This document shows, one piece after another, positions 10,431 through 64,000 of a stretch of DNA of 64,000 nucleotides (position 1 is the stretch's first letter; each line of letters starts with the position of its first letter). The translations under genes were made by a program, and so were the position numbers. The notes under the pieces were generated by a model that had not been told where the DNA came from, did not search any database, and saw only the letters and a program-made list of their open reading frames with translations. Source of the DNA: Anthoceros angustus (lineage: Eukaryota > Plantae > Anthocerotophyta). Location of the stretch: positions 1 through 64,000 of the forward strand of contig VJWM01000204.1 of NCBI GenBank assembly GCA_010909165.1, written 5' to 3'.

Positions 10431-10559
10431 AATAATCCTCAAAGAAATTACCCAAAGAAAGGCGAGACCTAAATCGAAAGATTTCTCCGCACCATGAACT
10501 TAAAAATCTCACATTCTTGCAAATATCTTTTAATAATCGTGTGATCTACGGTTGTTAAG

Positions 10560-10664
10560 GTTTGTTCAATGAAGATTCATGTTCTCCTTTATAGAGGGAT
10601 GAGTTTATGCATGTATGTTCCTGTGTGTGCTAACGAATTCATTCTCTCTACTTGTTCCCTGTAG
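10560..10664 (+). other. Predicted 105-nt spliceosomal intron in the kinase 5' leader (example; one per 230-bp module)
   Basis: AAG|GTTTGT donor, GCTAAC branch site at 10629-10634, pyrimidine tract TTCTCTCTACTTGTTCCCT, TAG|G acceptor. Confidence 0.75.
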
Positions 10665-10746
10665 GTTTCCCTAGAGGGCACGTAAATTACCCAAAGGGCG
10701 GGACCTAAACCGAAAGAAATACTCCTATTTATCAATCTTTAAAATT

Positions 10747-11545
10747 ATGGAGTCCACAATGAAAATTGAAGTGAGAATGTTTGAAGAAAGATACATATGT
10801 GGAAAATGTATCGGTGAAGGAGGTTTTTCCAAAGTCTATGAATGCTATGACAAATATACGGAAAGATATTTGCCTGCAAAATTATGAAAAATCTAAAGAC
10901 ATAAATGATGCAATATGTAGAGAGATCAACACTCTTGATCTCTTCCAAAATATTCTCATATTATTAACACAAAAGTGTTCATGAGGATATTGAACATATT
11001 TATATTGTGATGGAGCTATGTACCAATGGTACAAAGGATGAACTGGGAGGGGAGCTTGTGAAGAGGATGCAAAATACTTATGTTTAACCTAATGGAGGCA
11101 ATCAATTTTGGCATAATGTTATGCATCGCGATTTGAAACCGCTAATATACTATTACTTAGCCGCTCTCAAAGTCATACTAGACTTTGGTTTATGCTTCCA
11201 TGTCTCCAAAGCGAACATGAATTATTGCTGGGAGCTGCAGGAACCCCATGTTACATGGCTCGGAGGTATTGAGTCAAGACGATGTAAACATAAGCTATAC
11301 TTCAAAAGCCGATATTTGGAGCGCAGGAGTCATTTTGTATGAAGTTTTAACGGAAATCGTCCTTATATAGGATATGAGTTCGACAAAAAGAAGAATGGAT
11401 AACTCAATTGGACCTAGATGAGTGGCCCAACATGTCACACAAGTGAAAGATCTACTACACTCAATGTTACATTTAGAACAAGAGTGTAGACCGGATGCAG
11501 CAAGTTCTAAACCATTCTTGGTTTTGCTCGCTATCTTATATATGA
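10747..11545 (+). CDS. Ser/Thr protein kinase, CAMK/CDPK/PPCK-like, kinase domain only (copy 1; frameshifts probably sequencing errors)
   Basis: Consensus across copies: MESTMK..IGEGGFSKVY..FACK..REINTL..IVMELC..HRDLKPANILL..LADFGL..GTPCYMAPEVL..DIWSAGVILYEVLTG..RPDAQQVLNHSWF..SYI*. Confidence 0.85.
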
Positions 11546-12039
11546 AAGATAGTAATTTTATTATATAAGAACTTTTATTTGTATTATATATTTTAATATA
11601 ATGATTTTTATTTTAACTTTATTCATAATTTCATTAAACCACTCTTCGCCTCTTTCTTGTGGAAAAGTCTTCAAGCCATGCTCATGAAATTGATGTAGTG
11701 AAGCTAAGATTGGAGTATATCGCTATGTGTTTAGCCGAGTGCTGTTTTGGTCATTGTCATAGCATGGCATAATAGCATCGGACAATTTCTTCTTCTATAG
11801 CTACGCATATTATAGTTACTAAATCGCATGTTAGAATCGACGGGTTCGCAAACCACGATTCTGCGGCTCTAAGCGGGCCTCAACGTGTTGTGGGACCACA
11901 CCAAGGGTGTGCGAATGTTTTGAATCATGAGCGAGTGAAACGTGGCCCGAGGCGGAGTGTGAAGATGGCGGCGTGCGAGAAGGAAAATTGGCATTTAGGG
12001 TGGAAACGGCTATTGTTGAAGTCCCACCTTGCGGCCCAG

Positions 12040-13319: not shown

Positions 13320-13660
13320 AATTAACATAACCACTTCATATTAATTAATTAATACTAATACTTACTTAATGATAAGTCATTAGATTAATTAATGCTAGAT
13401 ATAAATGAATTTAACCACTTATATTAATTAATACTAATTACTTACTTAATGATAAGTCATTAGATTAATTAATGCTAGATATAAATGAATTTAACCACTG
13501 TTAATTAATTAATACTAATTACTTACTTAATGATAAGTCATTAGATTAATTAATGCTAGATATAAATGAATTTAACCACTTATATTAATTAATTAATACT
13601 AATTACTTACTTAATGATAAGTCATTAGATTAATTAATGCTGATATAAATGAATTTAACA
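13320..13660. repeat. AT-rich ~80-bp tandem repeat x4 (example; also ~24670-24920, 29215-29388, 33625-33885, 39250-39530, 43985-44240, 49825-50165, 54760-55017, 60235-60482; 2-4 copies each)
   Basis: Unit: TTAATTAATTAATACTAATAACTTACTTAATGATAAGTCATTAGATTAATTAATGCTAGATATAAATGAATTTAACCAC. Confidence 0.92.
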
Positions 13661-13749
13661 TAAATCAGCACTATCTCTTTCTAAAATAGATGCCAATATA
13701 CCAATCGACACCTTAAAATTTACCAATTTACTAGTCCAATTCATTCTAG

Positions 13750-14493: not shown

Positions 14494-15305
14494 ATGGAGT
14501 CCACAATGAAAATTGAAGTGAGAATGTTTTGAAGAAAGATACATATGTGGAAAATGTATTGAAGGAGGTTTTTCCAAAGTCTATGAATGCTATGACAAAT
14601 ATACGGGAAAGATATTTGCCTGCAAAATTATGAAAAATCTAAAGACATAAATGATGCAATATGTAGAGAGATCAACACTCTTGATCTCTTCCAAAATATT
14701 CTCATATTATTAACACAAAAAGTGTTCATGAGGATATTGAACATATTTATATTGTGATGGAGCTATGTACCAATGGTACACTAAAGGATGAACTAAAAAG
14801 GGGAGCTTATTGTGAAGAGGATGCAAAAATACTTATGTTTAACCTAATGGAGGCAATCAATTTTGCCATGTATAATGTTATGCATCGCGATTTGAAACCG
14901 CTAATATACTATTATTTAGCCGTCTCAAAGTCATACTAGCGACTTTGGTTTGTCATTCCATGTCTCCAAAACGAACATGAATTATTGTGCAGGAGCTGCA
15001 GGAACCCCATGTTACATGGCTCGGAGGTATTGGAGTCAAGACGATGTAAACATAAGCTATACTTCAAAAGCCGATATTTGGAGCGCAGGAGTCATTTTGT
15101 ATGAAGTTTTAACCGGAAATCCCTTATATAGGATATGAGTTCGACGAAAGAAGAATGGATAACTCAATTGGACCTAGATGAGTGGCCCAACATGTCACAC
15201 CTAAGTGAAAGATCTACTACACTCAATGTTACATTTAGAACAAGAGTGTAGACCGGATGACAAGTTCTAAACCATTCTTGGTTTTGCTCGCTATCTTATA
15301 TATGA
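14494..15305 (+). CDS. Ser/Thr kinase copy 2
   Basis: Near-identical to copy 1; ORF pieces MMELCTNGTLKDELKRGAYCEEDAKILMFNLMEAINF..HRDLKP and AGAAGTPCYMA..DIWSAGVILYEVLTG. Confidence 0.85.
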
Positions 15306-15882
15306 AAGATAGTAATTTTATTATATAAGAACTTTTATTTGTATTATATATTTTTAATATAATGATTTTTATTTTAACTTTATTCATAATTTCATTAAAC
15401 CACTCTTGGCCTCTTTCTTGTGAAAGTCTTCAAGCCATGCAAGCGGACCATGAAATTGATGTAGTGAAGCTAAGATTGGAGTATATCGCTATGTGTTTAG
15501 CGTGAGTCTTGTTTTGGTCATTGTCATAGCATGGCATAATAGCATCGGACAATTTCTTCTTCTATAGCTACGCATATTATAGTTACTAAATCGCATGTTA
15601 GAATCTTGACGGGTTCGCAAACCCCGACCGGCTCTAAGCGGCTGCTCAACGTGCTTGTGGGACGACCACACCAAGGGTGTGCGAATGTTTTGAATCATGA
15701 GCCGAGCAAGTGAACGTGGCCGAGGCGGAGTGTGAAGATGGCGGCGCGAGAAGGAAAATTGGCATTTAGAAAACGCTATTGTTGAAGTCCCACCTGCGCC
15801 CCACGAGAGAGAACTCCCACCGGCAGGCAATGGACACCCGCTGTCAAAGAAGCCATCACACAAGAAAGGGGGGTGGTTGCAG

Positions 15883-16229
15883 TGTCAGCCTTGATGCATG
15901 GAGGAATCAAGCGTGGCCGCCTTGATGATAGATGCTAGCATGCGTGATCGGTGAGCAGATGGACCGCAGTTGAAGCGAGGAAGACTAGAACGATTAGGGT
16001 TGGAAGGTCAAGTTGAGGCAAATAGGCCAACCACGGTTAAATGGAAGTCGATTAGGCTAACCTAGATGACACTAACCTAGCTAGCTAGTAACGACTCGAA
16101 CCCCTCAAGGAGAAAAGGACACGTGCACGAGGAGCGGAGGCTACCACCCGCCTCCCAAGAATCAAGAGCCCTCTCGCATTCCATCCGCACTTCGTGTCTT
16201 GGTCTCCGCTCCGAGGAATGCCGATTACA
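15883..16229 (+). repeat. 5' LTR (347 bp)
   Basis: TGTCA...TTACA; shares an identical core AATAGGCCAACCACGGTTAAATGGAAGTCGATTAGGCTAACCTAGATGACACTAACCTAGCTAGCTAGTAAC with 23118-23464. Confidence 0.92.
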
Positions 16230-16232
16230 TCT

Positions 16233-16243
16233 TGGTATCGAGG
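16233..16243 (+). promoter_or_regulatory. Primer binding site, initiator tRNA-Met type
   Basis: TGGTATCGAG 3 nt after the LTR; canonical form is TGGTATCAGAGC. Confidence 0.8.
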
Positions 16244-16514
16244 ACGCGGTGCCGAATAATGGATCCGAATAGCTGAATGGATGACGGCGATTTGACCAAG
16301 AACACTGCCGAGTGGGGAAGTGACGGCTAGGGGCAAGGAATGTGGGGACTGTGGCGGGAAGTTGTTATTCACCGAGATGGATGGCGGTGGGGACAAGAGC
16401 ACGGACCTTTGAAGGTGCAGGAGCGTTTGCTCGAGGTCAAGTGAGTGCAAGGCGTTGGTGGTAGAGGATTGGGATCGAGTGGAAGAACGATGGGGAATTC
16501 ATTGCGATGCGCCG

Positions 16515-17962
16515 CAAGAAGGAAGGAAAAGCTGGAAAGAAAGGCAAGGAGGGACAAAAGAAGTGTTGGTTGGAGGAGGGCAGCGAGATTGTAATACCTT
16601 TCGGATTGATCAATGCGCCTACAATGATTCGAAGGTGTGTTTGCTTGAGCACAATCCTTGCTTTATGGCGCCTCTAGACGCAAGATAGAGTAAGAGGCCT
16701 CCAGGCCGGTCATTTCAGAATCATGTCGCAAGCGGAAGCCCAGAGCTCAAACTTGGCTTCTTGTGAGCACGTGTGCAAGACGATGTTCTTGAATAGTAGA
16801 GGAGCCGAACGGAGCGACAGAGCTTGGTGTCCGAAATGCCAATGAATGTGTCGTAGCGAAATTTGCCATTCCACATGCATGAGAAGCAATCGGTCGGTTT
16901 CCAGACCACCACGGTTTTAAGATCGGGTGTTTCGATCACCATTGATCAATACACGTGTGAGAGAGCAATTCTATTCGTGATGGTCAAACACGTTGAGCAC
17001 GCAAGAAGGAAGGAAAATGGAAAGAAAGGCAAGGAGGGACAAAAGAAGTGTTGGTTGGAGGAGGGCAGCGAGATTGTAATACCTTTGATTGATCAATGCG
17101 CCTACAATGATTCGAAGGTGTGTTTGCTTGAGCACAATCCTTGCTTTATGGCGTCTCTAGACGCAAGATAGAGTAAGAGGCCTCCAGGCCGGTCATTTCA
17201 GAATCATGTCGGCAAGCGGAAGCCCAGAGCTCAAACTTGGCTTCTTGTGAGCACGTGTGCAAGACGATGTTCTTGAATAGTAGAGGAGCCGAACGGAGCG
17301 ACAGAGCTTGGTGTCCGAAATGCCAATGAATGTGTCGTAGCGAAATTTGCCATTCCACATGCATGAGAAGCAATCGGTCGGTTTCCAGACCACCACGGTT
17401 TTAAGATCGGGTGTTTCGATCACCATTGATCAATACACGTGTGAGAGAGCAATTCTATTCGTGATGGTCAAACACGTTGAGCACGCAAGAAGGAAGGAAA
17501 AGCTGGAAAGAAAGGCAAGGAGGGACAAAAGAAGTGTTGGTTGGAGGAGGGCAGCGAGATTGTAATACCTTTCGATTGATCAATGCGCCTACAATGATTC
17601 GAAGGTGTGTTTGCTTGAGCACAATCCTTGCTTTATGGCGTCTCTAGACGCAAGATAGAGTAAGAGGCCTCCAGAGGCCGCAGTCGCTCAAAGAATCATG
17701 TCGCGGCGGAAGCCCATTGCTCAAACTTGGCTTCTTGTGAGCACCTGCAGACGACAGTTCTTGAATAGCTTGTAGAGGAGTAACGGAGCGACAGAGCTTG
17801 GTGTCCAAATGCCAATGAATGTGTCCGGTAGCCATTCCACATGCATGAGAAGCAATCGGTTTCACCAGACCAGCCACGAAGACTGGGTGTTTCGATCACC
17901 ATTGATCAATACACGTGAGAGAGCAATTATTCGTGATGGTCAAACACGTTGAGCACGCAAGA
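16515..17962 (+). repeat. Three ~485-bp direct repeats in the retrotransposon 5' leader
   Basis: GCAAGAAGGAAGGAAAA..GGGACAAAAGAAGTGTTGG starts at ~16515, ~17001 and ~17485; the third copy is more diverged. Confidence 0.92.
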
Positions 17963-18899
17963 ATGCGAGAACCGCCCATTGATCTTGGAGGATACGGAGT
18001 CAACATTTGTGACGCGAGTGGACCGTCATTGTGACTAGCCTTGCTACATGTGCGAGAGGCGAACCGGCGATTGTAGAGACACCGGCGATTTTGCGGTGAA
18101 GCGACATGGATAGCGACACTGCCTCCTCGAGGTGCAGAGAACAAGATCCTTGGCGATGTGAACCCGACTCGGATGTCGAGCCTCCAACCCTTCAGGTGTG
18201 AGGTCGAGAGGCGGCGAAGGCGCAAGAAAAGCCGCCGAGGAAGCCCAGTTGAGCCTCGAATGTAAAATGCTGCTACGCCGAGCGAGGTCAGCCGTGAGAA
18301 GGAATGTGGTAGAGGAAGGAGAGGTCGACTGCACTACTCAAGGAGTTGCGTAAATGGCACATGTGCTCAAAATATGAATGATGATGCGATGTGGATGCCA
18401 CGCGTGAGTTGGAGGTGCGAGCCGTGTGGAAGCCGAATTCCGATGATTCTTCAACGCACCTTGCGAACAACGAAGCACAAGAAAATTGATGGCAATTCTT
18501 GGCTCAGTCAAGGGGAGATGGCCCTACGAGAGAGATGTTGCAAGGAGGAATTCAACGCCCCGACTCGACAAGGCCTGCATTATGCCATATGTCAAGAGCG
18601 AGCCAATTCCAAATCGTGAAGCCGAGAGAAGAGTCGAGAGGGTAGCTAACGTGACGCGGAGAACTTGAAGGGCTTGTCAACATAACGACACGTAGCAACA
18701 CCCACCGCAAATCAAGAGACTCCAGAACTAAAACAGCGGATGATTCGGGTCTAGGTGAAGAAGAGCAAAGTGACCCACGCAGTCGACATGGCCGGAGGTC
18801 TAAGTTGCAAGACATGAACGGGCTCAAGCACGAGAGCTCAAGAACAAGGAAAGGGGAGGCGAGCATTCGATGAGGGTCCAGAGCCTACCAAGAACGATT

Positions 18900-19700
18900 T
18901 ATTTGAGGAAGAGAGCCAAGTTTGAGACATCGAGTCAAGATAGGAGTCCTACAAAGCCGCAAGAGTGGACTCAAGCTTTCGTATATTTTGAAGCGTGAAA
19001 ATGATCGAGAAAGAGAAAATCGATCTCACGCACATTATACTCATTTGGCGAGGGCGTGGTGGAGAATAGAAGAGAAGCCGCAAAGGGGAGAAGCCACCGT
19101 CCTCTCATGGGAAGTGATGAAAGTCAAGTCCTCCAAAATTTTCTGCCCAAGGACCACAAGGAACGTTGTTGGTCAAGATGGTATGCCCTCAAGCATACAG
19201 CTCCTTAGAGGAATTTCACTTGAGTTTCATGAAAACCATGCTCAAGTTACGACTTGGAGCAAGGTTAGCTAGATATTGTGATCTGTGCCAGTATAAGTTG
19301 GGAATTAAGAACGCGTTGCTCAGCTTGAAGAGGCCATGCCGCCATGGATATAGAAAATTATAGCGTGAAAACGTTAGCTCCAGGCCGCAATGGCAGCCAA
19401 TCCGTGCAAGGAGGGTGACCTTACCAAGCAAAGTATAGTGGCCAGCACATGGAAGCCAAGGTCGAGCGCACGAGCACCAACGCCAACCAACAAAGAAGAG
19501 TCAAGCCGATTGAATTCAAACAAAGAAGAAAGGGGAGAAGAAGGAATTCATGACGAAGGCCTATGCTTCATTTGCTCCCCGATCACATATCCGGACATCC
19601 ATATGGAGCCTTATACGGCAAGTGGTCGAGCAAGGAAGAGCACCATTGGCCTGCAGAGGCGTCAGCCAACGCATGGATAGATTGGCAAAATCGATCCGAA
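18900..19700 (+). mobile_element. gag: gag (frameshifted)
   Basis: ARAWWR..SWEVMK..F.P retrotransposon gag signature; GLCFIC zinc-knuckle start at ~19558. Confidence 0.7.
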
Positions 19701-19789
19701 TGTCATGACAGAAGAACAAAGGAGTAGAGATCGACTAGACAGAATGAGCAAGAAAGGTCCAAGTGTTATGAACACCTCAAGCACAGATC

Positions 19790-22700
19790 GCTGACAGTTG
19801 AGGGATTGTTGGGAGGCAAACGAGTCACTTTCTTAGTGGATGGAGGATCCTCACACAGCTACGTAAGAGCAGATGCGGCCAAAGACGCCCCAGAAGCCAT
19901 GTGGTATAGCACACAAACACAACAGCGAATGAAGTTAGCCAATGGCATGGTGGAGAAGGTAACCTTACACGAAATTCTGACCAGCATCAATATTTAGGGA
20001 TACACTGACCAGGTCAGACTTGAGGTTATCGATGCTCTAGCACATGAAGTGCTACTGGGGCAAGATTGGTTGTGGAAGGTTGACCCCAACATCTCGTGAA
20101 GCACGAAATAGCGTTGCAATGGCAAGGCAAAGAGTTGAAGTTGCAAGGAGCCTCCTTGCTAAGGACAAGTTGTTCTCAACAAGAAATGCTAGGAGGGCAC
20201 TCAAAAGAGGGAAGTTGAGTATGCTCGTTCTCACAATTGTTGCCAAGTAGAGCACGCATAAATTGGTCGGCCAGTGGGAGAGGTACCTTCGAGTTGCAAG
20301 AAGTCTTGGACGCCTTTGAAGATGTCTTCTCCGAGATGCGGCCCCAAGGAGAGACGTAGATCACGCTATAGACTGGTGGTGAGGCCCCAGAGGCCCCATA
20401 CAGCTTGCTCTGGAGAACATGCAGTCCAAGCAGAGATAGCTTGTTAAAGAAAGGGTTAGTAGAGCCATCTCAGATCACCATATCGCACTGCTCATCGTGA
20501 AACATAGAAACGGCAAAATCCGCATGTGCATTGACTATAGGGTCTGAATGCAACAACTCAAGAATCGCCCAAATGCCAAGAATAGAAGAGATACTTGACA
20601 ACCTAGTAGGCGCCAAGATTTTCAGCAAGGTTGATCTTCGTGGCTTTCACCGACACGATCCGGCTGGAGATGAGTATAAACCGCATTGACGAGAGGTACG
20701 GCCACTTGTTCTCGTGTTGCCTTCGGCATGACAAATGCACCAGCAACCTTCACAACGCTCATGACCAAGATATTGCGGCCCTACCTCGGAAATTTGTAGA
20801 AGTTTTCGTTGATGATATCTTAGTGTACTCCAAGGATGCCCGGAGCATAAGCAACACCTAGTATTAGTGCTCACCCGAGAGAACACCAATTGTATGCAAG
20901 GAAAGCAAAGTGCGAGTTCTTCCAAGAGGGTAAACTACCTTGGGTTCATCGCCTCGCGAGAGGTGGATCGTAAAGGTGCGTTGCATTGTGGAGTGGCCAG
21001 CCTAATGACTTGTCAGGTGCGCAATTCTTAGGCATGTGTGTACAAATGAGGAGTTTCATACCACAATATGCGAAGATAGAAGTCCGACAAACTTGACTTG
21101 CAAGGCATCCAAGTTTCCAATGTCAAGAGGCCAAAGTGGCATTTCAGATGAAGAAAGCGGTGACTAAGTCGCTATTCTTACCTTGGATATGGAGAAGCCA
21201 TTTGTGGTAAGAACCGACGCATCAAATCTAGCCCTAGGTGTCAGATCGCAACAAGATGGAAAGAGTGTAAGTTTCCTATCAAGGAAACTCCAAGGCGCAG
21301 AGTGCAATTACACAACTCACGATAAGGAGCTTGGGGTTTATGCACTAAAAGCTTGGAGACATTACCTCTATGGGAGTGAGTTTGTGGTATACATGCACCA
21401 TCGTAGCTTGGAGCATTTTTTCAAGCAACCTTTGTTGAACCCGATAAACAAGGTGGCGAGTACTGCGATTTCCACTTCACGATCTCCTACTCCCTGTAAG
21501 GCAAATTTAATGCCGATGCTCGAGCGTAAGAAGGTGTAGTGTCTTTGCTCAGTGGAGTCCGACATGTGGAAGGAGGTGAGGGAGTCGACCAAAGATGAGC
21601 ATTTGAGTAACATCCTACGCAAGTTGGAGGACGTGTCACTACCGGGCACCCTCGAGCTTGGGGGAGATACAAGACTCATCAAGGCATCTATATAGAAAGG
21701 GAAGCTTTGCATACCCGCATGTTGCTCAAGCTTGAAGCTAACCTTGCTCCATGATGCACATGATGCTCCTACAGCAGGGCACATGGGCATGGAACTTATC
21801 AGCGTTTGAAGGAACATGTGTGGTGGAAGGGCATGCGAGCAGAGTGTATAGAGTATGTAAGAACATGCTTACCTTGTCAGCAAACGAAGGTTGAAAGGAA
21901 GTCTCCAGTAGGACTCTTGATGCATGCAAGTCCTCCGAGAAGTGGCAAAGCATGTCATGCGATTTCGTGACTTGCCTTCCCAAGACTCAAGAGGAAATGA
22001 CGCCATCCGGTTTGCATGGACAGAGCTACTAAATTGGCTCACTTTATTCCGAAGGGTACTATAAAGGCCAAGTCATTAGCTCCCATTTTCCTCAAGGTGA
22101 GACCGCACGGGTGCCACAGGAGATAGTGAGCGATCGAGATTCCAAGTTCACATCGAGTTTTGACCGCCGCAAGAGCCTAGGCATCAAGCAATGTCGAGCT
22201 CGCTACCATGCACTGATGGAGCCGAGAAGTTGAACTGACCATGGAGGACTTGCTCGACCTTACGCCATGACAAGCAAGTGGGAAGAAGTGCGCCTTGGTG
22301 GAGTTTGCCTACAACTCGCAAAGCATTCAAAGAACGGATACTCACCCTTCAAAATGATTTATGGCAAGAACTTGCCCTCCGTGTCTGGGCTGTTGGGTGG
22401 CGAGCCAAAGTCGACGGAGCTAAGTGAAGAGATGCATGAAGCCCTTAACGATGCCATCCTGCGTATGCAAGTCGTGAATCAGCACAGAGCCACACACGCC
22501 AACAAGAAGAGACGCGATGAGCAGCACGAGGTAGGAGATCTGGTATGGCTGAGAGTCAAGCCAAATCGTTACTCCTGTCTACAAGAAGGTAAGGCAAAGT
22601 TGGCATACAGGTATGTGGGACCTTTTGCCGTGAGTAAGAAAATTTCTGCAGTTGCTTACCAGCTCGACTTGCCCACCAGGAAGATGTGCAGCTTTTGTCC

Positions 22701-23079
22701 TTGCTTAAGAAGTTTGTGGGAGAGCCTCCACAAGTTCCTAGACGATGGACCCACCGGCCAAGCATCGCCTAAGAAGAGCGCAACATCGGCCGATGGAGGG
22801 TACTGTTGCAACGAATTTCTACAACCTAGGAGAGAAGGACCCAACGCCAAGCTGAGCTGCCAGAAGAAGGAGGAGGGAGTGCGAACTTGCAGAAGACGCA
22901 AGTTCAAGCTGTGTGACCAGCTCATCTTCCAACCAGAGATTCTCGACGCCGAGCGAGTGTTGCAGGCAGACCGTGAAGGAATACTTGGTGAGGAGGCGAC
23001 CATCAAGAGGACCCGAGTTGGGAAACCAAGCCTTCATCGAAACTTTTCAACACCTCAAGAAACCCAAAGCGGAGAATGA
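19790..23079 (+). mobile_element. pol: pol: protease-RT-RNase H-integrase-chromodomain (frameshifted)
   Basis: FLVDGGSSHSYV; RMCIDYR; FVEVFVDDILVYS; FVVRTDASNLALG; NYTTHDKEL; WRHYLYG; HDAPTAGHMG; IVSDRDSKFTS; GYSPF; VGDLVWL..YVGPFAV..AYQLDLP; EILDA..VKEYLVR (chromodomain-like). Confidence 0.93.
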
Positions 23080-23101
23080 AGCGAGGCCCTCGATGCTCGC
23101 T

Positions 23102-23117
23102 AGAGGAAGGAAGAGGA
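23102..23117 (+). promoter_or_regulatory. Polypurine tract
   Basis: AGAGGAAGGAAGAGGA immediately before the 3' LTR TG. Confidence 0.88.
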
Positions 23118-50269: not shown

Positions 50270-52232
50270 AGTTTCTCATGGGGTATAAATGGGCGAGACT
50301 TAAAATCGCTCGGACTCGAACTTCAAATCTTGTTATCCATTCTTCTTGCATGTAACTTTTCATAATTCTATGATCTACTGATTGTTAAGGTTTGTTCAAT
50401 GAAGATTGATGTTCTCCTTCAGAGGGATGAGTTTATGCATGTATATTCCTATGTGTGCTACGAATTCATTCTCTCTACTTGTTCTCTGAGTTTCCCTAGA
50501 GGGCACGTAATTACCCAAAGGCGAGACCTAAACCGAAAGATTTCCTCCCATGAACTTAAAAATCTCACATTCTTGCAAATATCTTTTAATAATCGTGTGA
50601 TCTACGGTTGTTAAGGTATGTTCCATGAAGATTCATGTTCTCCTTTATAGAGGGATGGGTGTATGCATGTGTATTCAGTGTTAATTCATTCTTTCTACTT
50701 GTTCCCTCGGGTTTCCTAGAGGGCACGAATTACCCAAAGGCGAGACCTAAACCGAAAGATTTCCTCGCACCATGAACTTAAAAATCTCACATTCTTGCAA
50801 ATATCTTTTAATAATCGTGTGATCTACTTGTTAAGGTTTGTTCAATGAAGATTCATGTTCTCCTTTATAGAGGGATGAGTTTATGCATGTATATTCCTAT
50901 GTGTGCTAACGATTCATTCTCTCTACTTGTTCCTATGAGGTTTCCCTAGAGGGCACGGTACCCAAAGGCGAGACCTAAACCGAAGATTTCCTCCGCACCA
51001 TGAACTTAAAAATCTCACATTCTTGCAAATATCTTTTAATAATCGTGATCTACTTGTTAAGGTTTGTTCATGAAGATTCATGTTCTCCTTTATAGAGGAT
51101 GAGTTTATGCATGTATACGTGTGGAAGAATTCATTCTCTCTACTTGTTCCTAGTTTCTAGAACGTAAATTACCCAAAGGGGACCTAAACCGAAGAAATAC
51201 TCCTATTTATCAATCTTTTAAAATTATGGAGTCCACAATGAAAATTGAAGTGAGAATGTTTGAAGAAAGATACATATGTGGAAAATGTATCGGTGAAGGA
51301 GGTTTTTCCAAAGTCTATGAATGCTATGACAAATATACGGAAAGATATTTGCCTGCAAAATTATGATCTACTATTGTTAAGGTTTGTTCAATGAAGATTG
51401 ATGTTCTCCTTACGGAGGGATGAGTTTATGCATGTATATTATTATGTGCTTCGAATTCATTCTCTCTACTTGTTCTCTGAGTTTCCCTAGAGGGCACGTA
51501 AATTACCCAAAGGCGAGACCTAAACCGAAAGATTTCCTCCGCCATGAACTTAAAAATCTCACATTCTTGCAAATATCTTTTAATAATCGTGTGATCTAAG
51601 TTAAGGTATGTTCCATGAAGATTCATGTTCTCCTTTATAGAGGGATGGGTGTATGCATGTGTATTCGGCGTGTTGAATTCATTCTTTCTACTTGTTCCCC
51701 TGGGTTTCCTAGAGGGCACGTAAATTACCCAAAGGCGAGACCTAAACCGAAAGATTTCCTCCCCACCATGAACTTAAAAATCTCACATTCTTGCAAATAT
51801 CTTTTAATAATCGTGATCTACTGATTGTTAAGGTTTGTTCAATGAAGATTCATGTTCTCCTTTATAGAGGGATGAGTTTATGCATGTATGTTCCTATGTG
51901 CTAACGAATTCATTCTCTCTACTTGTTCTCTGAGTTTCCCTAGAGGCACGTAAATTACCCAAAGGCGAGACCTAAACCAAAGATTTCCTCCGCACCATGA
52001 ACTTAAAAATCTCACATTCTTGCAAATATCTTTTAATAATCGTGTGATCTACTATTGTTGAGGTATGTTCCATGAAGATTCATGTTCTCCTTTATAGAGG
52101 ATGAGTTTATGCATGTATGTGTGCTAACGATTCATTCTTTCTACTTGTTCCTGGGTTTCCCTAGAGGGCACGTAAATTACCCAAAGGGACCTAAACCAAA
52201 GAAATACTCCTATTTATCAATCTTTTAAAATT
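50270..52232 (+). repeat. ~230-bp modules 4+4, split by a kinase 5' fragment, unit 8
   Basis: Four donors before 51226 and four after 51367. Confidence 0.85.
51226..51366 (+). pseudogene. 5' fragment of kinase joined back to the first 230-bp module
   Basis: ...GCAAAATTATGA then TCTACTATTGTTAAGGTTTG with the first-module variant AAGATTGATG. Confidence 0.75.
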
Positions 52233-53043
52233 ATGGAGTCCACAATGAAAATTGAAGTGAGAATGTTTGAAGAAAGATACATATGGAAAATGTATCGGTG
52301 AGGTTTTTCCAAAGTCTATGAATGCTATGACAAATGCGGAAAGATATTTGCCTGCAAAATTATGAAAAATCTAAAGACATAAATGATGCAATATGTAGAG
52401 AGATCAACACTCTTGATCTCTTCCAAAATATTCTCATATTATTAACACAAAAAGTGTTCATGAGGATATTGAACATATTTATATTGTGATGGAGCTATGT
52501 ACCAATGGTACACTAAAGGATGAACTAAAAAGGGGAGCTTATTGTGAAGAGGATGCAAAAATACTTATGTTTAACCTAATGGAGGCAATCAATTTTGCCA
52601 TGGCATAATGTTATGCATCGCGATTTGAAACCGCTAATATACTATTACTTAGCCGCCTCAAAGTCATACTAGCGAGACTTTGGTTTGTCTTCCATGTCTC
52701 CAAAACGAACATGAATTATTGTATGCAGAACCCCATGTTACATGGCTCGGAGGTATTGGAGTCGGAAGACGATGTAAACATAAGCTATACTTCAGAAGCC
52801 GATATTTGGAGCGCAGGAGTCATTTTGTATGAAGTTTTAACCGAAAATCGTCCTTACATAGGATATGAGTTCGACGCCGAAAAAGAAGAATGGATAACTC
52901 AATTGGACCTAGATGAGTGGCCCAACATCTCACACGAAGTGAAAGATCTACTACACTCAATGTTACATTTAGAACAAGAGTGTAGACCGGATGCGCAGCA
53001 AGTTCTAAACCATTCTTGGTTTTGCTCGCTATCTTATATATGA
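52233..53043 (+). CDS. Ser/Thr kinase copy (unit 8)
   Basis: C-lobe open in one frame: EVLESEDDVNISYTSEADIWSAGVILYEVLT..RPDAQQVLNHSWFCSLSYI*. Confidence 0.88.
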
Positions 53044-53549: not shown

Positions 53550-54175
53550 AACTCCTAGCCTGCGGGCAATGGACACCGTTGCAGAAGCCATCACACAAGA
53601 AAAGGGGGAGGCGGTAGGTAGCGCCTTGATGAACTGGAGAAATCCTTGCCCATGGCCCCGTGAGTCTCGATGGCAATGGGGATGAAGGCGTGGCCCTTCT
53701 TGCATGGGCGAGTACTTGTGAACGTTCGTTGTCGCGCATCTCTCCGCCACCCAACCGGAGGGTTGATGATGGCGATGCTGCGCGGTGTCCCGCAAGGTGC
53801 ATTACGGCACATCCACAACGTCCCCCCCTGGTCGAGAACATGGCGTCGCGGACGGCGTGATCTTGCAACGCCACATTGGTGGAGCGAGGGCTCTGGGTCT
53901 AAAGAGAGCGCCAAAGGTTGGACCAAACCAGTGAACCTCATCGCAGTAGAAAAAGAAGCCGGTGAGACTCGAACTACCTTGATGCAAGGTCGCGCTAGAA
54001 GCCATGAACCTGCTCCTTCCCGAGCAAGAGCGGAGGCGAGCTCGAGCTGGTCAAGGAATGGAGGAATCGAGGAGCAAAGCCCGGTGCCGTGCCCATACAA
54101 GTTTCTTCTCATGGAGGAGGCCAAAAGCCTTACGTCGCAGAGAACGAGGACGAATGCGGCATGACCGCCTAGCCT
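53550..54175 (-). mobile_element. CRE-like remnant, unit 8
   Basis: EGAGSWLLARPCIKVVRVSPASFSTAMRF and AFIPIAIETHGAMGKDF in ORF 53591-54190. Confidence 0.78.
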
Positions 54176-55116
54176 CGGAGGATAGGACACTAGCCAATCT
54201 TAAGGACAAGCATGCAAGGGAAGGCGCCTCCTCGGCCGAGACGAAGGCCTTGAAGATGCGGTAATCCCTGGATTAGGAAATGGGAGGCCTAGATGCGGGT
54301 TGAGAGGACCAGCTCAGGCCTGCCGATGCCTTGCAGGCGTGGCCGCTCTTCGAGTAGCAATTGCATTCATGTGAGCACTTCCTCAACGGACAACCAAGCA
54401 AAACAAGTCTAATATGCAAATACCAATTTGTAACACTAGGAGAGAGTAGCTTGCGTTGTGGTTTTCCTCCTCACGAGAACAACACGCAAATTCGTACATG
54501 GCTCTGGGGTGATAGCTTTGGCCTCCTCACAACTCTCATTGCATATGTAGAGGACAAGTTATGATGTGAGCTTGTCCTGTGAAGGGTCTATATAGATATA
54601 CTAGGCCTTGGCGTTGGCATATTCCTAAGATATCCTATTGGCATATACGAAATATCCAAAGAATACACCATAATATGCAAGGAATATGCTAAAGCATATA
54701 ACTTGTGTTTATCCACTTAGTTATTGCTAACCGTGTTTAATTAATTGATCGATGCTTAATTAACCACTTCATATTAATTAATTAATACTAATAACTTACT
54801 TAATGATAAGTCATTAGATTAATTAATGCTAGATATAAATGAATTTAACCACTTCATATTAATTAATTAATACTAATAACTTACTTAATGATAAGTCATT
54901 AGATTAATTAATGAATATAAATGAATTTAACCACTTCATATTAATTAATTAATACTAATAACTTACTTAATGATAAGTCATTAGATTAATTAATGCTAGA
55001 TATAAATGAATTTAACATAAATCAGCAGCACTATCTCTTTCTAAAATAGATGCCAATATACCAATCGACAATTGAAAATTTACCAATTTACTAGTTGCCA
55101 ATATATGAAGCCGGTA

Positions 55117-56300: not shown

Positions 56301-57092
56301 ATGGAGTCCACAATGAAAATTGAAGTGAGAATGTTTGAAGAAAGATACATATGTGGAAAATGTATCGGTGAAGGAGGTTTTTCCAAAGTCTATGAATGCT
56401 ATGACAAATATACGGAAAGATATTTGCCTGCAAAATTATGAAAAATCTAAAGACATAAATGATGCAATATGTAGAGATCAACACTCTTCGATCTCTTCCA
56501 AAATATTCTCATATTATTAACACAAAAGTGTTCATGAGGATATTGAACATATTTATATTGTGATGGAGCTATGTACCAATGGTACACTAAAGGATGAACT
56601 AAAAAGGGGAGCTTATTGTGAAGAGGATGCAAAATACTTATGTTTAACCTAATGGAGGCAATCAATTTTGCCAGGCATAATGTTATGCATCGCGATTTGA
56701 AACCGGCTAATATACTATTATTTAGCCGCTCAAAGTCATACTAGCAGACTTTGTTCTCCATGTCTCCAAAACGAACATGAATTATTAAGTAGGAACCCCA
56801 TGTTACATGGCTGGAGGTATTGGAGTCGAGAAGGATGTAAACATAAGCTATACTTCAAAAGCCGATATTTGGAGCGCAGGAGTCATTTTGTATGAAGTTT
56901 TAACCGAAATCGTCCTTATATAGGATATGAGTTCGAAAAAAGAAGAATGGATAACTCAATTGGACCTAGATGAGTGGCCCAACATGTCACAGTGAAAGAT
57001 CTACTACACTCAATGTTACATTTAGAACAAGAGTGTAGATCTTGTGACAAGTTCTAAACCATTCTTGGTTTTGCTCGCTATCTTATATATGA
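56301..57092 (+). CDS. Ser/Thr kinase copy (unit 9)
   Basis: Same start, stop and motifs. Confidence 0.85.
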
Positions 57093-57707: not shown

Positions 57708-58514
57708 ATGGAGTCCACAATGAAATTGAAGTGAGAATGTTTGAAGAAAGATACATATGTGGAAAATGTATCGGTGAAGGAGGTTTTTCCAAAGTCTATG
57801 AATGCTATGACAAATATACGGAAAGATATTTGCCTGCAAAATTATGAAAAATCTAAAGACATAAATGATGCAATATGTAGAGAGATCAACACTCTTGATC
57901 TCTTCCAAAATATTCTCATATTATTAACACAAAAGTGTTCATGAGGATATTGAACATATTTATATTGTGATGGAGCTATGTACCAATGGTACACTAAAGG
58001 ATGAACTAAAAAGGGGAGCTTATTGTGAAGAGGATGCAAAATACTTATGTTTAACCTAATGGAGGCAATCAATTTTGCCAGGGCATAATGTTATGCATCG
58101 CGATTTGAAACCGCTAATATACTATTACTTAGCTCAAAGTCATACTAGCAGACTTTGGTTTGTCTGCTCCATGTCTCCAAAACGAACATGAATTATTGTG
58201 TGGGAGCTAGAACCCCATGTTACATGGCTCCGGAGGTATTGGAGTCAAGACGATGTAAACATAAGCTATACTTCAAAAGCCGATATTTGGAGCGCAGAGT
58301 CATTTTGTATGAAGTTTTAACCGAAATCGTCCTTATATAGGATATGAGTTCGACGAAAAGAAGAATGGATAACTCAATTGGACCTAGATGAGTGGCCCAA
58401 CATGTCACACGGTGAAAGATCTACTACACTCAATGTTACATTTAGAACAAGAGTGTAGACCGGATGCAGCAAGTTCTAAACCATTCTTGGTTTTGCTCGC
58501 TATCTTATATATGA
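57708..58514 (+). CDS. Ser/Thr kinase copy (unit 10), lacking its own promoter and leader modules
   Basis: CTAGCAGACTTTGGT (LADFG) and TACATGGCTCCGGAGGTATTG (YMAPEVL) intact; only ~50 bp of leader upstream. Confidence 0.85.
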
Positions 58515-60584: not shown

Positions 60585-61794
60585 AGTTTCTCATGGGGTA
60601 TAAATGGGCGAGACTTAAAATCAGCTAGCACTCGGACTCGAACAAATCTTGTTATCCATTCTTCTTGCATGTAACTTTTCATAATTCTATGATCTACGGT
60701 TGTTAAGGTTTGTTCAATGAAGATTGATGTTCTCCTTTACGGAGGGATGAGTTTATGCATGTATATTCCTATGTGTGCTAACGAATTCATTCTCTCTACT
60801 TGTTCTCTGAGGTTTCCCTAGAGGGCACGTAAATTACCCAAAAGACCTAAACCGAAAGATTTCCTCCGCCATGAACTTAAAAATCTCACATTCTTGCAAA
60901 TATCTTTTAATAATCGTGTGATCTACTTGTTAAGGTATGTTCCATGAAGATTCATGTTCTCCTTTATAGAGGGATGGGTGTATGCATGTGTATTCCTAGC
61001 GTGTTAACGAATTCATTCTTTCTACTTGTTCCCTCTGAGGTTTCCCTAGAGGGCACGTAAATTACCCAAAGGGCGAGACCTAAACCGAAAGATTTCCTCC
61101 GCACCATGAACTTAAAAATCTCACATTCTTGCAAATATCTTTTAATAATCGTGTGATCTCTGTTGTTAAGGTTTGTTCAATGAAGATTCATGTTCTCCTT
61201 TATAGAGGGATGAGTTTATGCATGTATGTTCCGTGTGCTAACGAATTCATTCTCTCTACTTGTTCTACAGTTTCCCTAGAGGGCACGTAAATTACCCAAA
61301 GGGCGAGACCTAAACCGAAGATTCCTCCCATGAACTTAAAAATCTCACATTCTTGCAAATATCTTTTAATAATCGTGTGATCTACGGTTGTTAAGGTATG
61401 TTCCATGAAGATTCATGTTCTCCTTTATAGAGGGATGGTGTATGCATGTGTATTCGCGTGTTAATTCATTCTTTCTACTTGTTCCCTGGGTTTCCCTAGA
61501 GGGCACGTAAATTACCCAAAGGCGAGACCTAAACCGAAAGATTTCCTCCGCACCATGAACTTAAAAATCTCACATTCTTGCAAATATCTTTTAATAATCG
61601 TGTGATCTACTATTGTTAAGGTTTGTTCAATGAAGATTCATGTTCTCCTTTATAGAGGGATGAGTTTATGCATGTATGTTCTGTGTGCTAACGATTCTCT
61701 CTACTTGTTCCCTGTTTCCTAGAGGGCACGTAAATTACCCAAAGGCGGGACCTAAACCGAAAGAAATACTCCTATTTATCAATCTTTTAAAATT
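60585..61794 (+). repeat. ~230-bp modules x5, unit 11
   Basis: ABABA pattern. Confidence 0.9.
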
Positions 61795-62612
61795 ATGGAG
61801 TCCACAATGAAAATTGAAGTGAGAATGTTTGAAGAAAGATACATATGTGGAAAATGTATCGGTGAAGGAGGTTTTTCCAAAGTCTATGAATGCTATGACA
61901 AATATATGGGAAAGATATTTGCCTGCAAAATTATGAAAAAATCTAAAGACATAAATGATGCAATATGTAGAGAGATCAACACTCTTCGATCTCTTCCAAA
62001 ATATTCTCATATTATTAACACAAAAGTGTTCATGAGGATATTGAACATATTTATATTGTGATGGAGCTATGTACCAATGGTACACTAAAGGATGAACTAA
62101 AAAAGGGGAGCTTATTGTGAAGAGGATGCAAAAATACTTATGTTTAACCTAATGGAGGCAATCAATTTTGCCACAGCATAATGTTATGCATCGCGATTTG
62201 AAACCGGCTAATATACTATTACTTAGCCGTCTCAAAGTCATACTAGGACTTTGGTTTATGCTTCCATGTCTCCAAAACGAACATGAATTATTGTATGCAG
62301 GAGGCTGGGGAACCCCATGTTACATGGCTCGGAGGTATTGGAGTCAAGACGATGTAAACATAAGCTATACTTCAAAAGCCGATATTTGGAGCCGAGTCAT
62401 TTTGTATGAAGTTTTAACCGAAATCGTCCTTATATAGGATATGAGTTCGACGAAAAGAAGAATGGATAACTCAATTGGACCTAGATGAGTGGCCCAACAT
62501 GTCACACAGTGAAAGATCTACTACACTCAATGTTACATTTAGAACAAGAGTGTAGACCGGATCTTGACAAGTTCTAAACCATTCTTGGTTTTGCTCGCTA
62601 TCTTATATATGA
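61795..62612 (+). CDS. Ser/Thr kinase copy (unit 11)
   Basis: N-lobe open: MESTMKIEVRMFEERYICGKCIGEGGFSKVYECYDKYMGKIFACKIMKKSKDINDAICREINTLRSLPKYSHIINTK; then HNVMHRDLKPANILLL. Confidence 0.9.
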
Positions 62613-63119
62613 AAGATAGTAATTTTATTATATAAGAACTTTTATTTGTATTATATATTTTAATATAATGATTTTTATTTTAACTTTATTCATAATTTCA
62701 TTAAACCACTCTTGATTGCCTCTTTCTTGTGAGAAAGTCTTCAAGCCATGCAAGCTCATGAAATTGATGTAGTGAAGGATTGGAGTATATCGCTATGTGT
62801 TTAGCTGAGTGCTTTTGGTCATTGTCATAGCATGGCATAATAGCATCGGACAATTTCTTCTTCTATAGCTACGCATATTATAGTTACTAAATCGCATGTT
62901 AGAATCTTGACGGGTTCGCAAACCCCGATTACCGGCTCTAAGCGGGCTGCTCAACGTGCTTGTGGGGCGACCACACCAAGGGTGTGCGAATGTTTTGAAT
63001 CATGAGCCGAGCAAGGCGAACGTGGCACAGGCGGAGTGTGAAGATGGCGTCACGAGAAGGAAAATTGGCATTTAGTGGAAACGGCTATTGTTGAAGTCCC
63101 ACCTTGTTGCCGTCCACAG

Positions 63120-63770
63120 AGAACTCCTACCGCAGGGCAATGGACACCGTTGCACGAAAGAAGCCATCACACAAGAAAAGGGGGCGGTGGTAGGCTTTAG
63201 CAGGCCTTGATGAACTGGAGAAATCCTTGCCCATGGCCCCGTGAGTCTCGATGGCAAGGGGATGAAGGCATGGCCCTTCTTGCATGGGCGAGTACTTGTG
63301 AACGCTCGTTGTCGCGCATCTCTCCGCCACCCAACCCGGAGGGTTGATGATGGCGTTGCGCAGAGTGTCCCGGGCAAGGTCTTCAGCCACATCCACAACA
63401 CTCCCCTCGGCCGAGAACATGGCGTCAGCGGGCGGCGTGATGCGTGTAATGCGCTGCCCGCCCGGAGAGCGAGGGCTACGGCGGCAGTCTAAAGAGAGCG
63501 AGCCAAAGGTTGGACCAAACCCGGAACCTCATCGCGGTAGAAAAGAAGCCGGTCGACTCGAAATACCTTGATGCAAGGTCGGGCTAGAAGCCATGAACCT
63601 CCCTTCCCGAGCAAGAGCGGAGGCGAGCTCGAGCTGGTCAAGGAATGGAGGAATCGAGGAGCAAAGCCAGCACGTGCCCATACAAGTTTCTTCTCATGGA
63701 GGGAGGCCAAAGCCCCACAGCCTGGGTCCGCAGAGAACGAGGACGAATGCGGCATGACCGCCTAGCCTCT
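63120..63770 (-). mobile_element. CRE-like remnant, unit 11
   Basis: VVDVAEDLARDT..PLAIETHGAMGKDF. Confidence 0.75.
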
Positions 63771-64000
63771 GAGGATAGGACACCCCTAGCCAATCTTAAG
63801 GACAAGCATGCAAGGGGAAGGCGCCCTCCTCGACGCCCGAGACGAAGGCCTTGAAGATGCGGTAATCCCTAGGGGATTAGGAAATGGGAGGCCTAGATGC
63901 GGGTTGAGAGGACCAAGCTCAAGCGTCGTGCCAGATGCCTTGCGGCGCACTCTAAGGGGCCGCTCTTCGGCGAGGTAAGCAATTGCATTCATGTGAGCAC

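What the first reader, a model, noticed from the sequence alone, without database searches (positions are those of the whole stretch)
10440..64000. Ampliconic kinase macrosatellite: a complete transcription unit amplified head-to-tail
Seen: about 11 near-identical 4-6 kb units over more than 53 kb, still open at the window end. An intact unit has upstream repeats, CCAAT/TATA, a spliced leader, a kinase ORF and an antisense retroelement remnant. A consensus across copies keeps all catalytic motifs (GEGGFSKV, FACK lysine, alpha-C Glu, HRDLKPAN, DFG, APE, DIWS, subdomain XI Arg), and I found no shared stop codon. Known: homogenised protein-coding macro-arrays are rare and often germline or conflict related (D4Z4/DUX4, Drosophila Stellate/Su(Ste), mouse Smok/Tcr kinases, ORF162 repeats on the Marchantia male chromosome). 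Inference: this may be a dosage-amplified or selfish/sex-linked kinase array; I do not recognise a described plant equivalent.
Basis: partly seen in the sequence, partly recalled or inferred. Interest (0 to 1): 0.9.

Follow-up and report, generated by a model that had tools for sequence, protein, structure and literature searches.

The report
Tandem kinase-gene repeat, error-ridden assembly
A bryophyte (probably hornwort) chromosome carries at least ten head-to-tail 4.4-5.8 kb repeats, each with a copy of a small calcium-kinase-like gene; every copy looks broken, but the breaks look mostly like sequencing errors at methylated DNA, so whether the genes work is still open.

Summary
The array is real. 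Ten units of 4.4-5.8 kb run from 10440 to the window end. Each has an 84-bp satellite, a 228-bp satellite, an intronless CAMK/CDPK-like kinase-only gene and a GC-rich tail. One LTR retrotransposon interrupts the array at 15878-23468.

As assembled, units are only 87-95% alike, and none of the ten full kinase copies has an open frame (8-16 frame-breaking junctions each).

The differences are not ordinary decay:
- They cluster at CG and CHG motifs (odds ratio 7-10).
- Indel columns outnumber substitution columns, and the frame-breaking variants are mostly deletions.
- Away from those motifs, from homopolymers and from gaps, the copies differ by about 0.25%.

This fits nanopore base-calling error at methylated cytosines in a repeat that short reads could not polish. 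It implies near-identical, heavily methylated copies.

A stop-free 274-residue mosaic with all catalytic motifs can be built from observed variants. Twelve of 25 junctions are in frame in only a minority of copies, so intactness is unresolved.

No reads could be obtained, and no close relative exists in public protein sets. Dosage, selfish or sex-linked roles are untested.

The scan has noted other gene-bearing tandem arrays elsewhere in this genome (ELF1, TFIIB, MADS, a thymidine-kinase relic), but not this kinase. The closest known kind is an ORF-bearing macrosatellite such as human RS447/USP17.

The parts
10440..64000 (+). Whole tandem array: ten units, the first lacking the 84-bp block and the last cut by the window end. 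Unit starts: 10440, 13341, 24673, 29216, 33630, 39250, 43988, 49827, 54760, 60242.
   Evidence: blastn of unit 29216-33629 against the window; TRF
29216..33629 (+). Reference unit (4414 bp): 84-bp satellite 29216-29387, 228-bp satellite 29563-31100, kinase about 31136-31944, AT-rich spacer, GC-rich tail about 32230-33629.
13341..13659 (+). 84-bp AT-rich satellite block (2-4 copies), which marks each unit start. Other blocks: 24673-24919, 29216-29387, 33630-33883, 39250-39531, 43988-44238, 49827-50165, 54760-55016, 60242-60481.
   Evidence: TRF, 86-98% matches
34057..36052 (+). 228-bp satellite (3-9 copies per unit), directly upstream of the kinase ATG and sharing its last about 30 nt with the kinase 5' flank. 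Other blocks: 10440-10700, 13758-14464, 25102-26602, 29563-31100, 36443-36933, 39709-41038, 44449-46397, 50343-51193, 51364-52202, 55194-56267, 60662-61764.
   Evidence: TRF; sequence read
10747..11545 (+). Kinase copy 1 (full length, frame broken as assembled)
14494..15305 (+). Kinase copy 2 (full length, frame broken)
26664..27460 (+). Kinase copy 3 (full length, frame broken)
31136..31944 (+). Kinase copy 4 (full length, frame broken)
41070..41881 (+). Kinase copy 5 (full length, frame broken)
46428..47231 (+). Kinase copy 6 (full length, frame broken; the most altered copy)
52233..53043 (+). Kinase copy 7 (full length, fewest frame breaks). It holds the longest in-frame stretch, 52747-53040, which covers the C-lobe up to the stop.
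56301..57092 (+). Kinase copy 8 (first of two kinases in unit 54760-60241)
57708..58514 (+). Kinase copy 9 (second kinase of the same unit, from an internal segmental duplication)
61795..62612 (+). Kinase copy 10. The N-lobe 61795-62025 is in frame from the ATG.
36038..37845 (+). Damaged kinase of unit 5. Two N-lobe fragments (36038-36411, 36919-37314) are separated by 228-bp repeats, followed by a C-terminal fragment (37397-37845). Kinase positions about 404-707, which hold the catalytic loop, are missing.
51182..51366 (+). Short N-terminal kinase fragment (first 187 nt) followed again by 228-bp repeats. A further 3' fragment lies at 48246-48409.
15878..23468 (+). LTR retrotransposon inserted cleanly into the tail of unit 2 (unit position 3280/3281). 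It has terminal direct repeats at 16012-16203 and 23257-23450, an internal 484-bp tandem repeat at 16513-17963, and an integrase-type SH3 domain at 22267-23079.
53591..54190 (-). Longest minus-strand ORF in the GC-rich tail (199 aa). Its origin is not identified and retroelement ancestry is not confirmed.
   Evidence: no Pfam hit; weak protein-atlas lead only

Best explanation
This is a young or strongly homogenised gene-bearing macrosatellite.

Origin (inferred): a mosaic unit was amplified head to tail by out-of-register recombination. The unit is an 84-bp satellite, a 228-bp satellite derived from the kinase's own 5' flank, an intronless CAMK/CDPK-like kinase-domain-only gene of about 274-285 codons, and a GC-rich tail. 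The internal satellites provide the homology for the recombination.

State of the copies: the true copies are nearly identical. Most of the 5-13% apparent divergence, and most of the frameshifts, are base-calling and consensus errors of a nanopore-type assembly at methylated cytosines (CG and CHG, above all CAG/CTG) and in A-runs. Short-read polishing could not correct them in a multi-copy repeat.

Consequence (inferred): the array, ORF included, is probably densely CG+CHG methylated, so it is heterochromatin-like and probably silent in the tissue that was sequenced.

Open question: whether the kinase ORF is truly intact. I put it near even odds.
For: Shown:
- Array structure and unit variants.
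- Kinase identity. Three in-frame pieces each pass Pfam Pkinase (39, 44 and 61 bits against a 31.7-bit cut-off). The best solved relatives are CDPK, CaMK1 and DCLK1. The pieces tile a whole kinase domain with the G-loop, the lysine of FACK, the alpha-C Glu, HRDLKPAN, DFG, APE, DIWSAG and the subdomain XI Arg.
- Variable alignment columns lie within 2 nt of CG/CHG motifs with odds ratio 7-10, p < 1e-32, even when the motifs are taken from one copy and variation is scored in the other nine.
- Between copies, CAG/CTG is altered in 79% of cells, CCG in 43% and CG in 29%, against 3% for AT-rich 3-mers and 12% for G/C 3-mers outside motifs.
- Indel cells number 447 against 392 substitution cells, with Ts:Tv about 1.1.
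- At some 4-10 nt spots all ten copies differ, while the flanks are invariant for tens of bases.
- In columns away from motifs, homopolymers and gaps, mean pairwise difference is 0.25%, against 9.8% overall.
- Frame-breaking variants are shorter than the in-frame variant in 98 of 124 cells, and -1 is the commonest class.
- CCGG is depleted in the array (observed/expected 0.66, against 1.02 in the flank).
- The invariant blocks hold 184 codons with no stop in the kinase frame.
- A stop-free 274-aa mosaic exists.

From papers:
- Methylation motifs and then homopolymers dominate nanopore consensus errors (PMC6591954).
- Published hornwort assemblies used R9 flow cells, Albacore, racon and Pilon (PMC8075897).

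Lead from earlier notes, not tested here: the same genome has proven assembly frameshifts in an expressed single-copy gene (s1-253383), and another gene array was judged too error-ridden to read (s1-262041).
Against: - No reads could be laid, so the error reading is inferred from pattern alone.
- I could not verify which assembly or sequencing platform the window comes from.
- In 12 of 25 junctions the in-frame state is held by a minority of copies, and in four of them by a single copy. One or more real shared frameshifts would look the same.
- Several majority frame breaks sit in A4-A6 runs rather than at methylation motifs.
- Two of the three 484-bp repeats inside the LTR element are almost clean although they hold many CG sites, so noise is not uniform across CG-bearing DNA.
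- Methylation and silencing are second-order inferences.
- No near-identical protein from any other public assembly was found to arbitrate.
Confidence: 0.7

Rival explanations
1. Functional ampliconic kinase family. The copies are truly intact and transcribed, perhaps in a restricted stage such as gametangia or sperm. They would be kept alike by gene conversion for dosage, or as a selfish or sex-linked element.
For: - Copies are near-identical in reliable columns.
- All catalytic motifs are present, with no stop in 184 invariant codons.
- Every junction is in frame in at least one copy.
- Each copy sits behind repeats of its own 5' flank.
- The kinase is a lineage-specific orphan, at most 49% identical to anything among 1.84 billion cluster representatives.
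Against: - No expression, depth or sex data are available.
- The error hot spots imply CHG methylation across the ORF, which in land plants marks silenced DNA (inference).
- The array tolerates a gutted copy, N-lobe fragments and an LTR insertion.
- Too few reliable substitutions exist to test selection: about 5 non-synonymous to 1 synonymous.
- Earlier notes report genes shortly beyond the window, not a large sex-specific block.
Confidence: 0.17
2. A truly decayed pseudogene array. The frameshifts are real, and the unit is ordinary satellite DNA that happened to include a dead kinase retrocopy.
For: - No copy is open as assembled, with 8-16 frame-breaking junctions per copy.
- The majority consensus is frameshifted.
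- Twelve junctions have the in-frame state only in a minority of copies.
- Real large lesions exist.
Against: - Real decay would not put more indels than substitutions into the copies while leaving 485 reliable columns 99.75% identical.
- It would not confine the changes to CG/CHG motifs with Ts:Tv near 1.
- It would not give ten different variants at one 4-nt spot.
- It would not bias frame breaks 98:26 towards deletions.
- There are no in-frame stops in the invariant blocks.
Confidence: 0.1
3. Assembly expansion: only one or two units exist, and the assembler multiplied them.
For: Noisy long-read assemblies can misjudge tandem copy number, and no depth data were available.
Against: The units differ by large, unit-specific structural features:
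- between 3.2 and 8.9 copies of the 228-bp repeat;
- a 7.6-kb LTR element in one unit only;
- a duplicated kinase in one unit;
- a deleted kinase in another;
- tail duplications of about 380 and 890 bp.
Each assembled unit is therefore distinct.
Confidence: 0.03

Closest known systems
Human RS447 megasatellite (USP17), with the TAF11-like and D4Z4/DUX4 macrosatellites (review PMC5687341)
   Same: - Head-to-tail units of 3.3-4.7 kb, each carrying one whole intronless ORF.
- In RS447 the unit has its own promoter activity.
- In the TAF11-like array the ORF lies beside transposon pieces.
- Arrays are copy-number variable and are partly methylated (RS447) or heterochromatic and normally silenced (D4Z4).
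- The unit size here (4.4-5.8 kb) and the mosaic make-up match well.
   Different: - This is a plant, not a mammal.
- The cargo is a CAMK-type kinase.
- The unit also contains two internal satellites whose copy number varies from unit to unit.
- Promoter activity, transcription, copy-number polymorphism and ORF intactness are all untested here.
Plant CDPK / PPCK-type CAMK kinases
   Same: - The kinase pieces align over the whole catalytic domain.
- A locally built mosaic is 37-38% identical to plant CDPK kinase domains (E about 1e-46).
- Like PPCK, it would be a kinase domain with almost nothing else (that comparison rests on my own knowledge).
   Different: - There is no autoinhibitory junction and no EF-hands; the frame ends six codons after the kinase domain.
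- No protein above 49% identity exists in the public sets searched.
- There is no intron within the domain.
Ampliconic or selfish germline arrays (Drosophila Stellate/Su(Ste), mouse Smok/Tcr, TSPY, Marchantia Y ORF162 repeats). Cited from my own knowledge; not retrieved here.
   Same: A protein-coding unit amplified in tandem with very high identity between copies.
   Different: Sex linkage, germline expression and a conflict role are the defining points, and none could be tested. Earlier notes suggest ordinary genes lie close by.
Other gene-bearing tandem arrays noted by this scan in the same genome (ELF1-like s1-262041, TFIIB s1-688635, MADS-box s1-267883, 7-kb mosaic with thymidine-kinase relic s1-313416)
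   Same: Kilobase-scale units arranged head to tail, each with a divergent, apparently intronless gene copy. At least one was also judged too error-ridden to read.
   Different: The cargo genes differ, and no sequence similarity to this array was found (where a blank carries little weight). I did not examine those loci.

Membership tests
Eukaryotic protein kinase superfamily (Pfam PF00069), CAMK group | Significant match to the Pkinase profile across the domain | tested here: met
   Three in-frame pieces score 39, 44.2 and 61 bits against a 31.7-bit cut-off and cover profile positions 4-63, 58-126 and 173-263. The best solved relatives are CDPK, CaMK1 and DCLK1.
Eukaryotic protein kinase superfamily (Pfam PF00069), CAMK group | Catalytic residues: G-loop, VAIK Lys, alpha-C Glu, HRD..N, DFG, APE, subdomain XI Arg | tested here: met
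   All are present in at least one copy in local frame and align to the expected columns.
Eukaryotic protein kinase superfamily (Pfam PF00069), CAMK group | One uninterrupted reading frame across the domain | tested here: inconclusive
   No assembled copy has one. A stop-free mosaic exists. The breaks look like sequencing errors, but no reads were available.
Calcium-dependent protein kinase (CDPK) | C-terminal autoinhibitory junction plus calmodulin-like EF-hand domain | tested here: not met
   The frame stops six codons after the kinase domain (52747-53040 and the stop that follows). AT-rich non-coding sequence comes next.
ORF-bearing macrosatellite (RS447/USP17 type) | Head-to-tail units of several kb in an array of tens of kb | tested here: met
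   Ten units of 4.4-5.8 kb span more than 53 kb.
ORF-bearing macrosatellite (RS447/USP17 type) | A complete coding sequence in each unit | tested here: inconclusive
   Nine of ten units carry a full-length kinase sequence, one unit has two, and one has a gutted copy. Whether the frames are open is unresolved.
ORF-bearing macrosatellite (RS447/USP17 type) | Copy-number polymorphism and transcription from the unit | not testable with these tools
Sex-linked or selfish ampliconic gene array | Very high identity between copies (homogenisation) | tested here: met
   Mean pairwise difference is 0.25% in 485 reliable columns.
Sex-linked or selfish ampliconic gene array | Sex or accessory-chromosome linkage and germline-restricted expression | not testable with these tools
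   There is no chromosome context and no reads. Earlier notes place housekeeping genes about 23 kb beyond the window (not checked here).

The most novel reading that the evidence does not exclude
The kinase copies are truly intact. In that reading this is one of a genome-wide class of recently amplified, epigenetically silenced, intronless gene arrays in this bryophyte (kinase, ELF1, TFIIB, MADS). The arrays would be switched on only in a restricted stage such as gametangia, sperm or the sporophyte. That would be a plant counterpart of animal ampliconic germline gene families, here with a lineage-specific CAMK-type kinase as cargo.
Probability: 0.13. Interest if true: 0.75.

Novelty: new member of a known kind. 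Interest (0 to 1): 0.4.

Why it matters
If the copies are intact and used, this is a rare plant example of a macrosatellite that encodes an enzyme. With the other gene arrays noted in this genome, it would point to a general route by which bryophytes amplify single genes.

There is also a practical lesson. In this assembly, differences between repeat copies and broken frames inside repeats cannot be taken at face value. Their placement at CG and CHG motifs is itself a usable indirect read-out of methylation.

Tried and rejected
- Protein searches with the C-lobe piece and the N-lobe piece found no near-identical fragment in the length ranges those tools can see.
- The exhaustive representative search gave nothing above 49% identity. 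Its top hits are multi-kinase proteins of unrelated eukaryotes.
- A profile of four distant kinases plus the window pieces (A1), used to reach full-length candidates, was flooded by ordinary CDPKs.
- The majority-rule consensus is frameshifted.
- A first dynamic-programming run without frame constraints took stop-free detours through wrong frames. Frame votes taken from HMM hits were unreliable.
I redid the step from window coordinates only.
- The mosaic ORF has no reference. It was used only in local scripts and was not sent to any search or folding tool. Structure prediction and remote searches of the joined protein were left out.
- The minus-strand ORFs of the GC-rich tail gave no Pfam hit even at E = 10, and only weak protein-atlas leads to LINE-type families.
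- Ten ORFs in the first 10.4 kb gave no Pfam hit.
- No Rfam family or tRNA was found.
- The by-sequence look-up in earlier findings was blank.
- dN/dS was abandoned because only about six reliable substitutions exist.


Full report
**1. What is there**

A blastn of one unit (29216-33629) against the window shows a head-to-tail array from about 10440 to the window end, all on the + strand. Tandem Repeats Finder shows two satellites inside every unit. One is an AT-rich 84-bp repeat of 2-4 copies. The other is a 228-bp repeat of 3.2-8.9 copies.

With the 84-bp block as the boundary there are ten units, starting at 10440, 13341, 24673, 29216, 33630, 39250, 43988, 49827, 54760 and 60242. They measure 4.4-5.8 kb. 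The first lacks the 84-bp block and the last is cut by the window.

Unit 2 is split at unit position 3280/3281 by a 7.6-kb insertion (15878-23468). The insertion has terminal direct repeats, an internal 484-bp repeat and a Tf2-type integrase SH3 domain, so it is an LTR retrotransposon.

Units differ by large rearrangements:
- two whole kinases in unit 9;
- a gutted kinase with duplicated N-lobe pieces in unit 5;
- a short N-terminal fragment in unit 8;
- tail duplications of about 380 bp (unit 6) and 890 bp (unit 7).

These unit-specific features argue against a simple assembly duplication.

**2. The gene**

Ten full-length copies and several fragments of about 0.8 kb match each other at 94-95%.

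In-frame pieces pass Pfam's Pkinase threshold. Their closest solved relatives are CDPK, CaMK1 and DCLK1.

Pieces taken from different copies tile a complete kinase domain when aligned with four distant CAMK-type kinases. The G-loop, the lysine of FACK, the alpha-C glutamate, HRDLKPAN, DFG, APE, DIWSAG and the subdomain XI arginine all fall in the expected columns.

The domain has no intron. The frame starts 12 codons before the domain and stops six codons after it. This is therefore a kinase-only protein, without the junction and EF-hands of a CDPK.

An exhaustive search of 1.84 billion cluster representatives found nothing above 49% identity. The better hits include streptophyte algae and a fern. 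Earlier notes of this scan call the genome a hornwort or bryophyte. I did not verify the species.

**3. No copy is open as assembled**

No ORF above 144 codons overlaps any copy. Chaining three-frame HMM hits needs three to seven frame switches per copy. Between 25 pairs of invariant anchor blocks, each copy has 8-16 frame-breaking junctions. A majority-rule consensus is also frameshifted.

**4. Why I think most breaks are errors**

The alignment of the ten copies is unusual. Stretches of up to about 60 bases are identical in all ten copies. They are interrupted by short spots where most or all copies differ, mainly by small indels.

- *Placement.* Variable columns lie within 2 nt of CG or CHG motifs with odds ratios of 7-10 (p < 1e-32). 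This holds when motifs are defined in one copy and variation is scored in the other nine.
- *Motif by motif.* CAG/CTG is altered between copies in 79% of comparisons, CCG in 43% and CG in 29%. The figures are 3% for AT-rich 3-mers and 12% for G/C-containing 3-mers outside motifs.
- *Spectrum.* Indel cells (447) outnumber substitution cells (392), and Ts:Tv is about 1.1.
- *Hot spots.* At some CCGG-type sites ten copies show up to ten different variants within ten bases.
- *Reliable columns.* In 485 columns away from motifs, homopolymers and gaps, the mean pairwise difference is 0.25%, against 9.8% over all columns. Half of that 0.25% comes from one misaligned stretch.
- *Deletion bias.* Frame-breaking variants are shorter than the frame-keeping variant in 98 of 124 cases, most often by one base.
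- *Motif depletion.* CCGG is depleted in the array (observed/expected 0.66) but not in the flank (1.02).
- *GC dependence.* Apparent divergence rises with GC content along the unit. The AT-rich kinase is 94-95% identical and the GC-rich tail 86-87%.

Natural decay would give mostly substitutions spread over the sequence, and methyl-cytosine deamination would give transitions. Neither is what is seen.

The pattern matches what is known of nanopore consensus errors. Methylation motifs the base-caller was not trained on come first and homopolymers second (PMC6591954). Published hornwort assemblies were made with R9 flow cells, Albacore, racon and Pilon (PMC8075897). Short-read polishing is weak in multi-copy repeats; that last point is my own knowledge.

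Earlier follow-ups in this genome reported a proven assembly frameshift in an expressed single-copy gene (s1-253383) and another gene array too error-ridden to read (s1-262041). I treat both as leads, not as tests.

**5. What follows**

If this reading is right, the true copies are about 99.7% or more identical. The array is then very young or actively homogenised. It is also methylated at CG and CHG across the ORF, which in land plants is the mark of silenced repeats. That last step is inference on inference.

**6. Is the gene intact?**

The invariant blocks hold 184 codons without a stop in the kinase frame, against 13 and 17 stops in the other two frames.

A dynamic programme chose, at each variable block, among variants actually seen in the ten copies. 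It forced every invariant block into the kinase frame. It finds a stop-free path of 274 codons, but 13 of 49 variable blocks need a minority variant.

By junction, 10 of 25 are in frame in most copies, 3 are split and 12 are in frame only in a minority. Four of those 12 rest on a single copy, and none of the 25 has zero in-frame copies. With this much noise, a single in-frame copy could itself be an error. One or a few real shared frameshifts therefore cannot be excluded.

The mosaic is 37-38% identical to plant CDPK kinase domains in a local blastp. It has no reference, so it was not sent to any remote search or folding tool.

Only about six reliable substitutions exist in the ORF, roughly five non-synonymous to one synonymous. 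That gives no power to test selection.

**7.

- *Upstream repeats.* These are real. The last 228-bp unit ends about 60 nt before the ATG and shares its final bases with the kinase 5' flank, so the satellite arose from that flank.
- *CCAAT/TATA boxes and spliced leader.* These cannot be checked without RNA.
- *Antisense retroelement remnant in the GC-rich tail.* This is not confirmed. Its minus-strand ORFs have no Pfam match even at E = 10. The protein atlas gives only weak leads to LINE-type zf-RVT/RVT_1 clusters.
- *RNA genes.* No Rfam family or tRNA lies in the window.

**8. Mechanism**

The differences between units are what out-of-register exchange between internal repeats produces. They are changes in the number of 228-bp repeats, segmental duplications with breakpoints inside units, and modules of an N-lobe followed by 228-bp repeats. 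I infer that the array grew and is kept alike by unequal exchange and conversion.

The single LTR insertion and the gutted copy show that individual units are not protected.

**9. Comparison and novelty**

The closest known kind is the ORF-bearing macrosatellite (PMC5687341):
- human RS447: 4.7-kb units with an intronless USP17 gene, 20-103 copies, partly methylated;
- the TAF11-like array: 3.4-kb units with an ORF plus transposon pieces;
- D4Z4/DUX4.

This array has the same architecture, with a different cargo and in a plant. Membership in the sex-linked or selfish ampliconic class cannot be tested here.

Earlier notes list several other gene-bearing arrays in this genome and a "poly-N-lobe" kinase ORF finding about 4 kb beyond the window. 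I did not inspect those loci.

I therefore file this as a new member of a known kind. Interest is moderate until reads settle whether the gene is intact and expressed.

**10. Limits**

There is therefore no read depth, no read-level check of the indels and no expression evidence.

Noticed in passing
window 1-10440: The left flank is GC-rich (49-62%) and strongly purine-skewed on the + strand. It has long ORFs on both strands, but ten ORFs gave no Pfam match and there are no tandem repeats. It may be a low-complexity Gly/Glu/Arg-rich coding region or a transposon part.
   Followed up: partly
window 15878-23468: An LTR retrotransposon carries an internal 484-bp tandem repeat (16513-17963, three copies). 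Copies 1 and 2 are almost identical despite many CG sites, and copy 3 is noisy. Assembly noise is therefore uneven even among CG-rich repeats.
   Followed up: partly
window 36038-37314 and 51182-52202: Kinase N-lobe fragments of 187, 379 and 404 nt are each followed again by 228-bp repeats. An earlier first-reader note (s1-655551) reports ORFs made only of tandem kinase N-lobes about 4 kb beyond the window end. This may be the same module taken further.
   Followed up: no
whole array, for example alignment sites around 11100-11300 and 62180-62400: CAG/CTG motifs differ between copies in 79% of comparisons, more than CG (29%). If this is base-calling error at 5mC, error density could serve as a crude map of CHG methylation in this assembly.
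   Followed up: partly
same genome, other pieces (earlier notes s1-262041, s1-688635, s1-267883, s1-313416): Several other kilobase-unit tandem arrays, each carrying a divergent gene copy (ELF1, TFIIB, MADS-box, a thymidine-kinase relic), have been noted. Gene-bearing macrosatellites may be a general feature of this genome.
   Followed up: no
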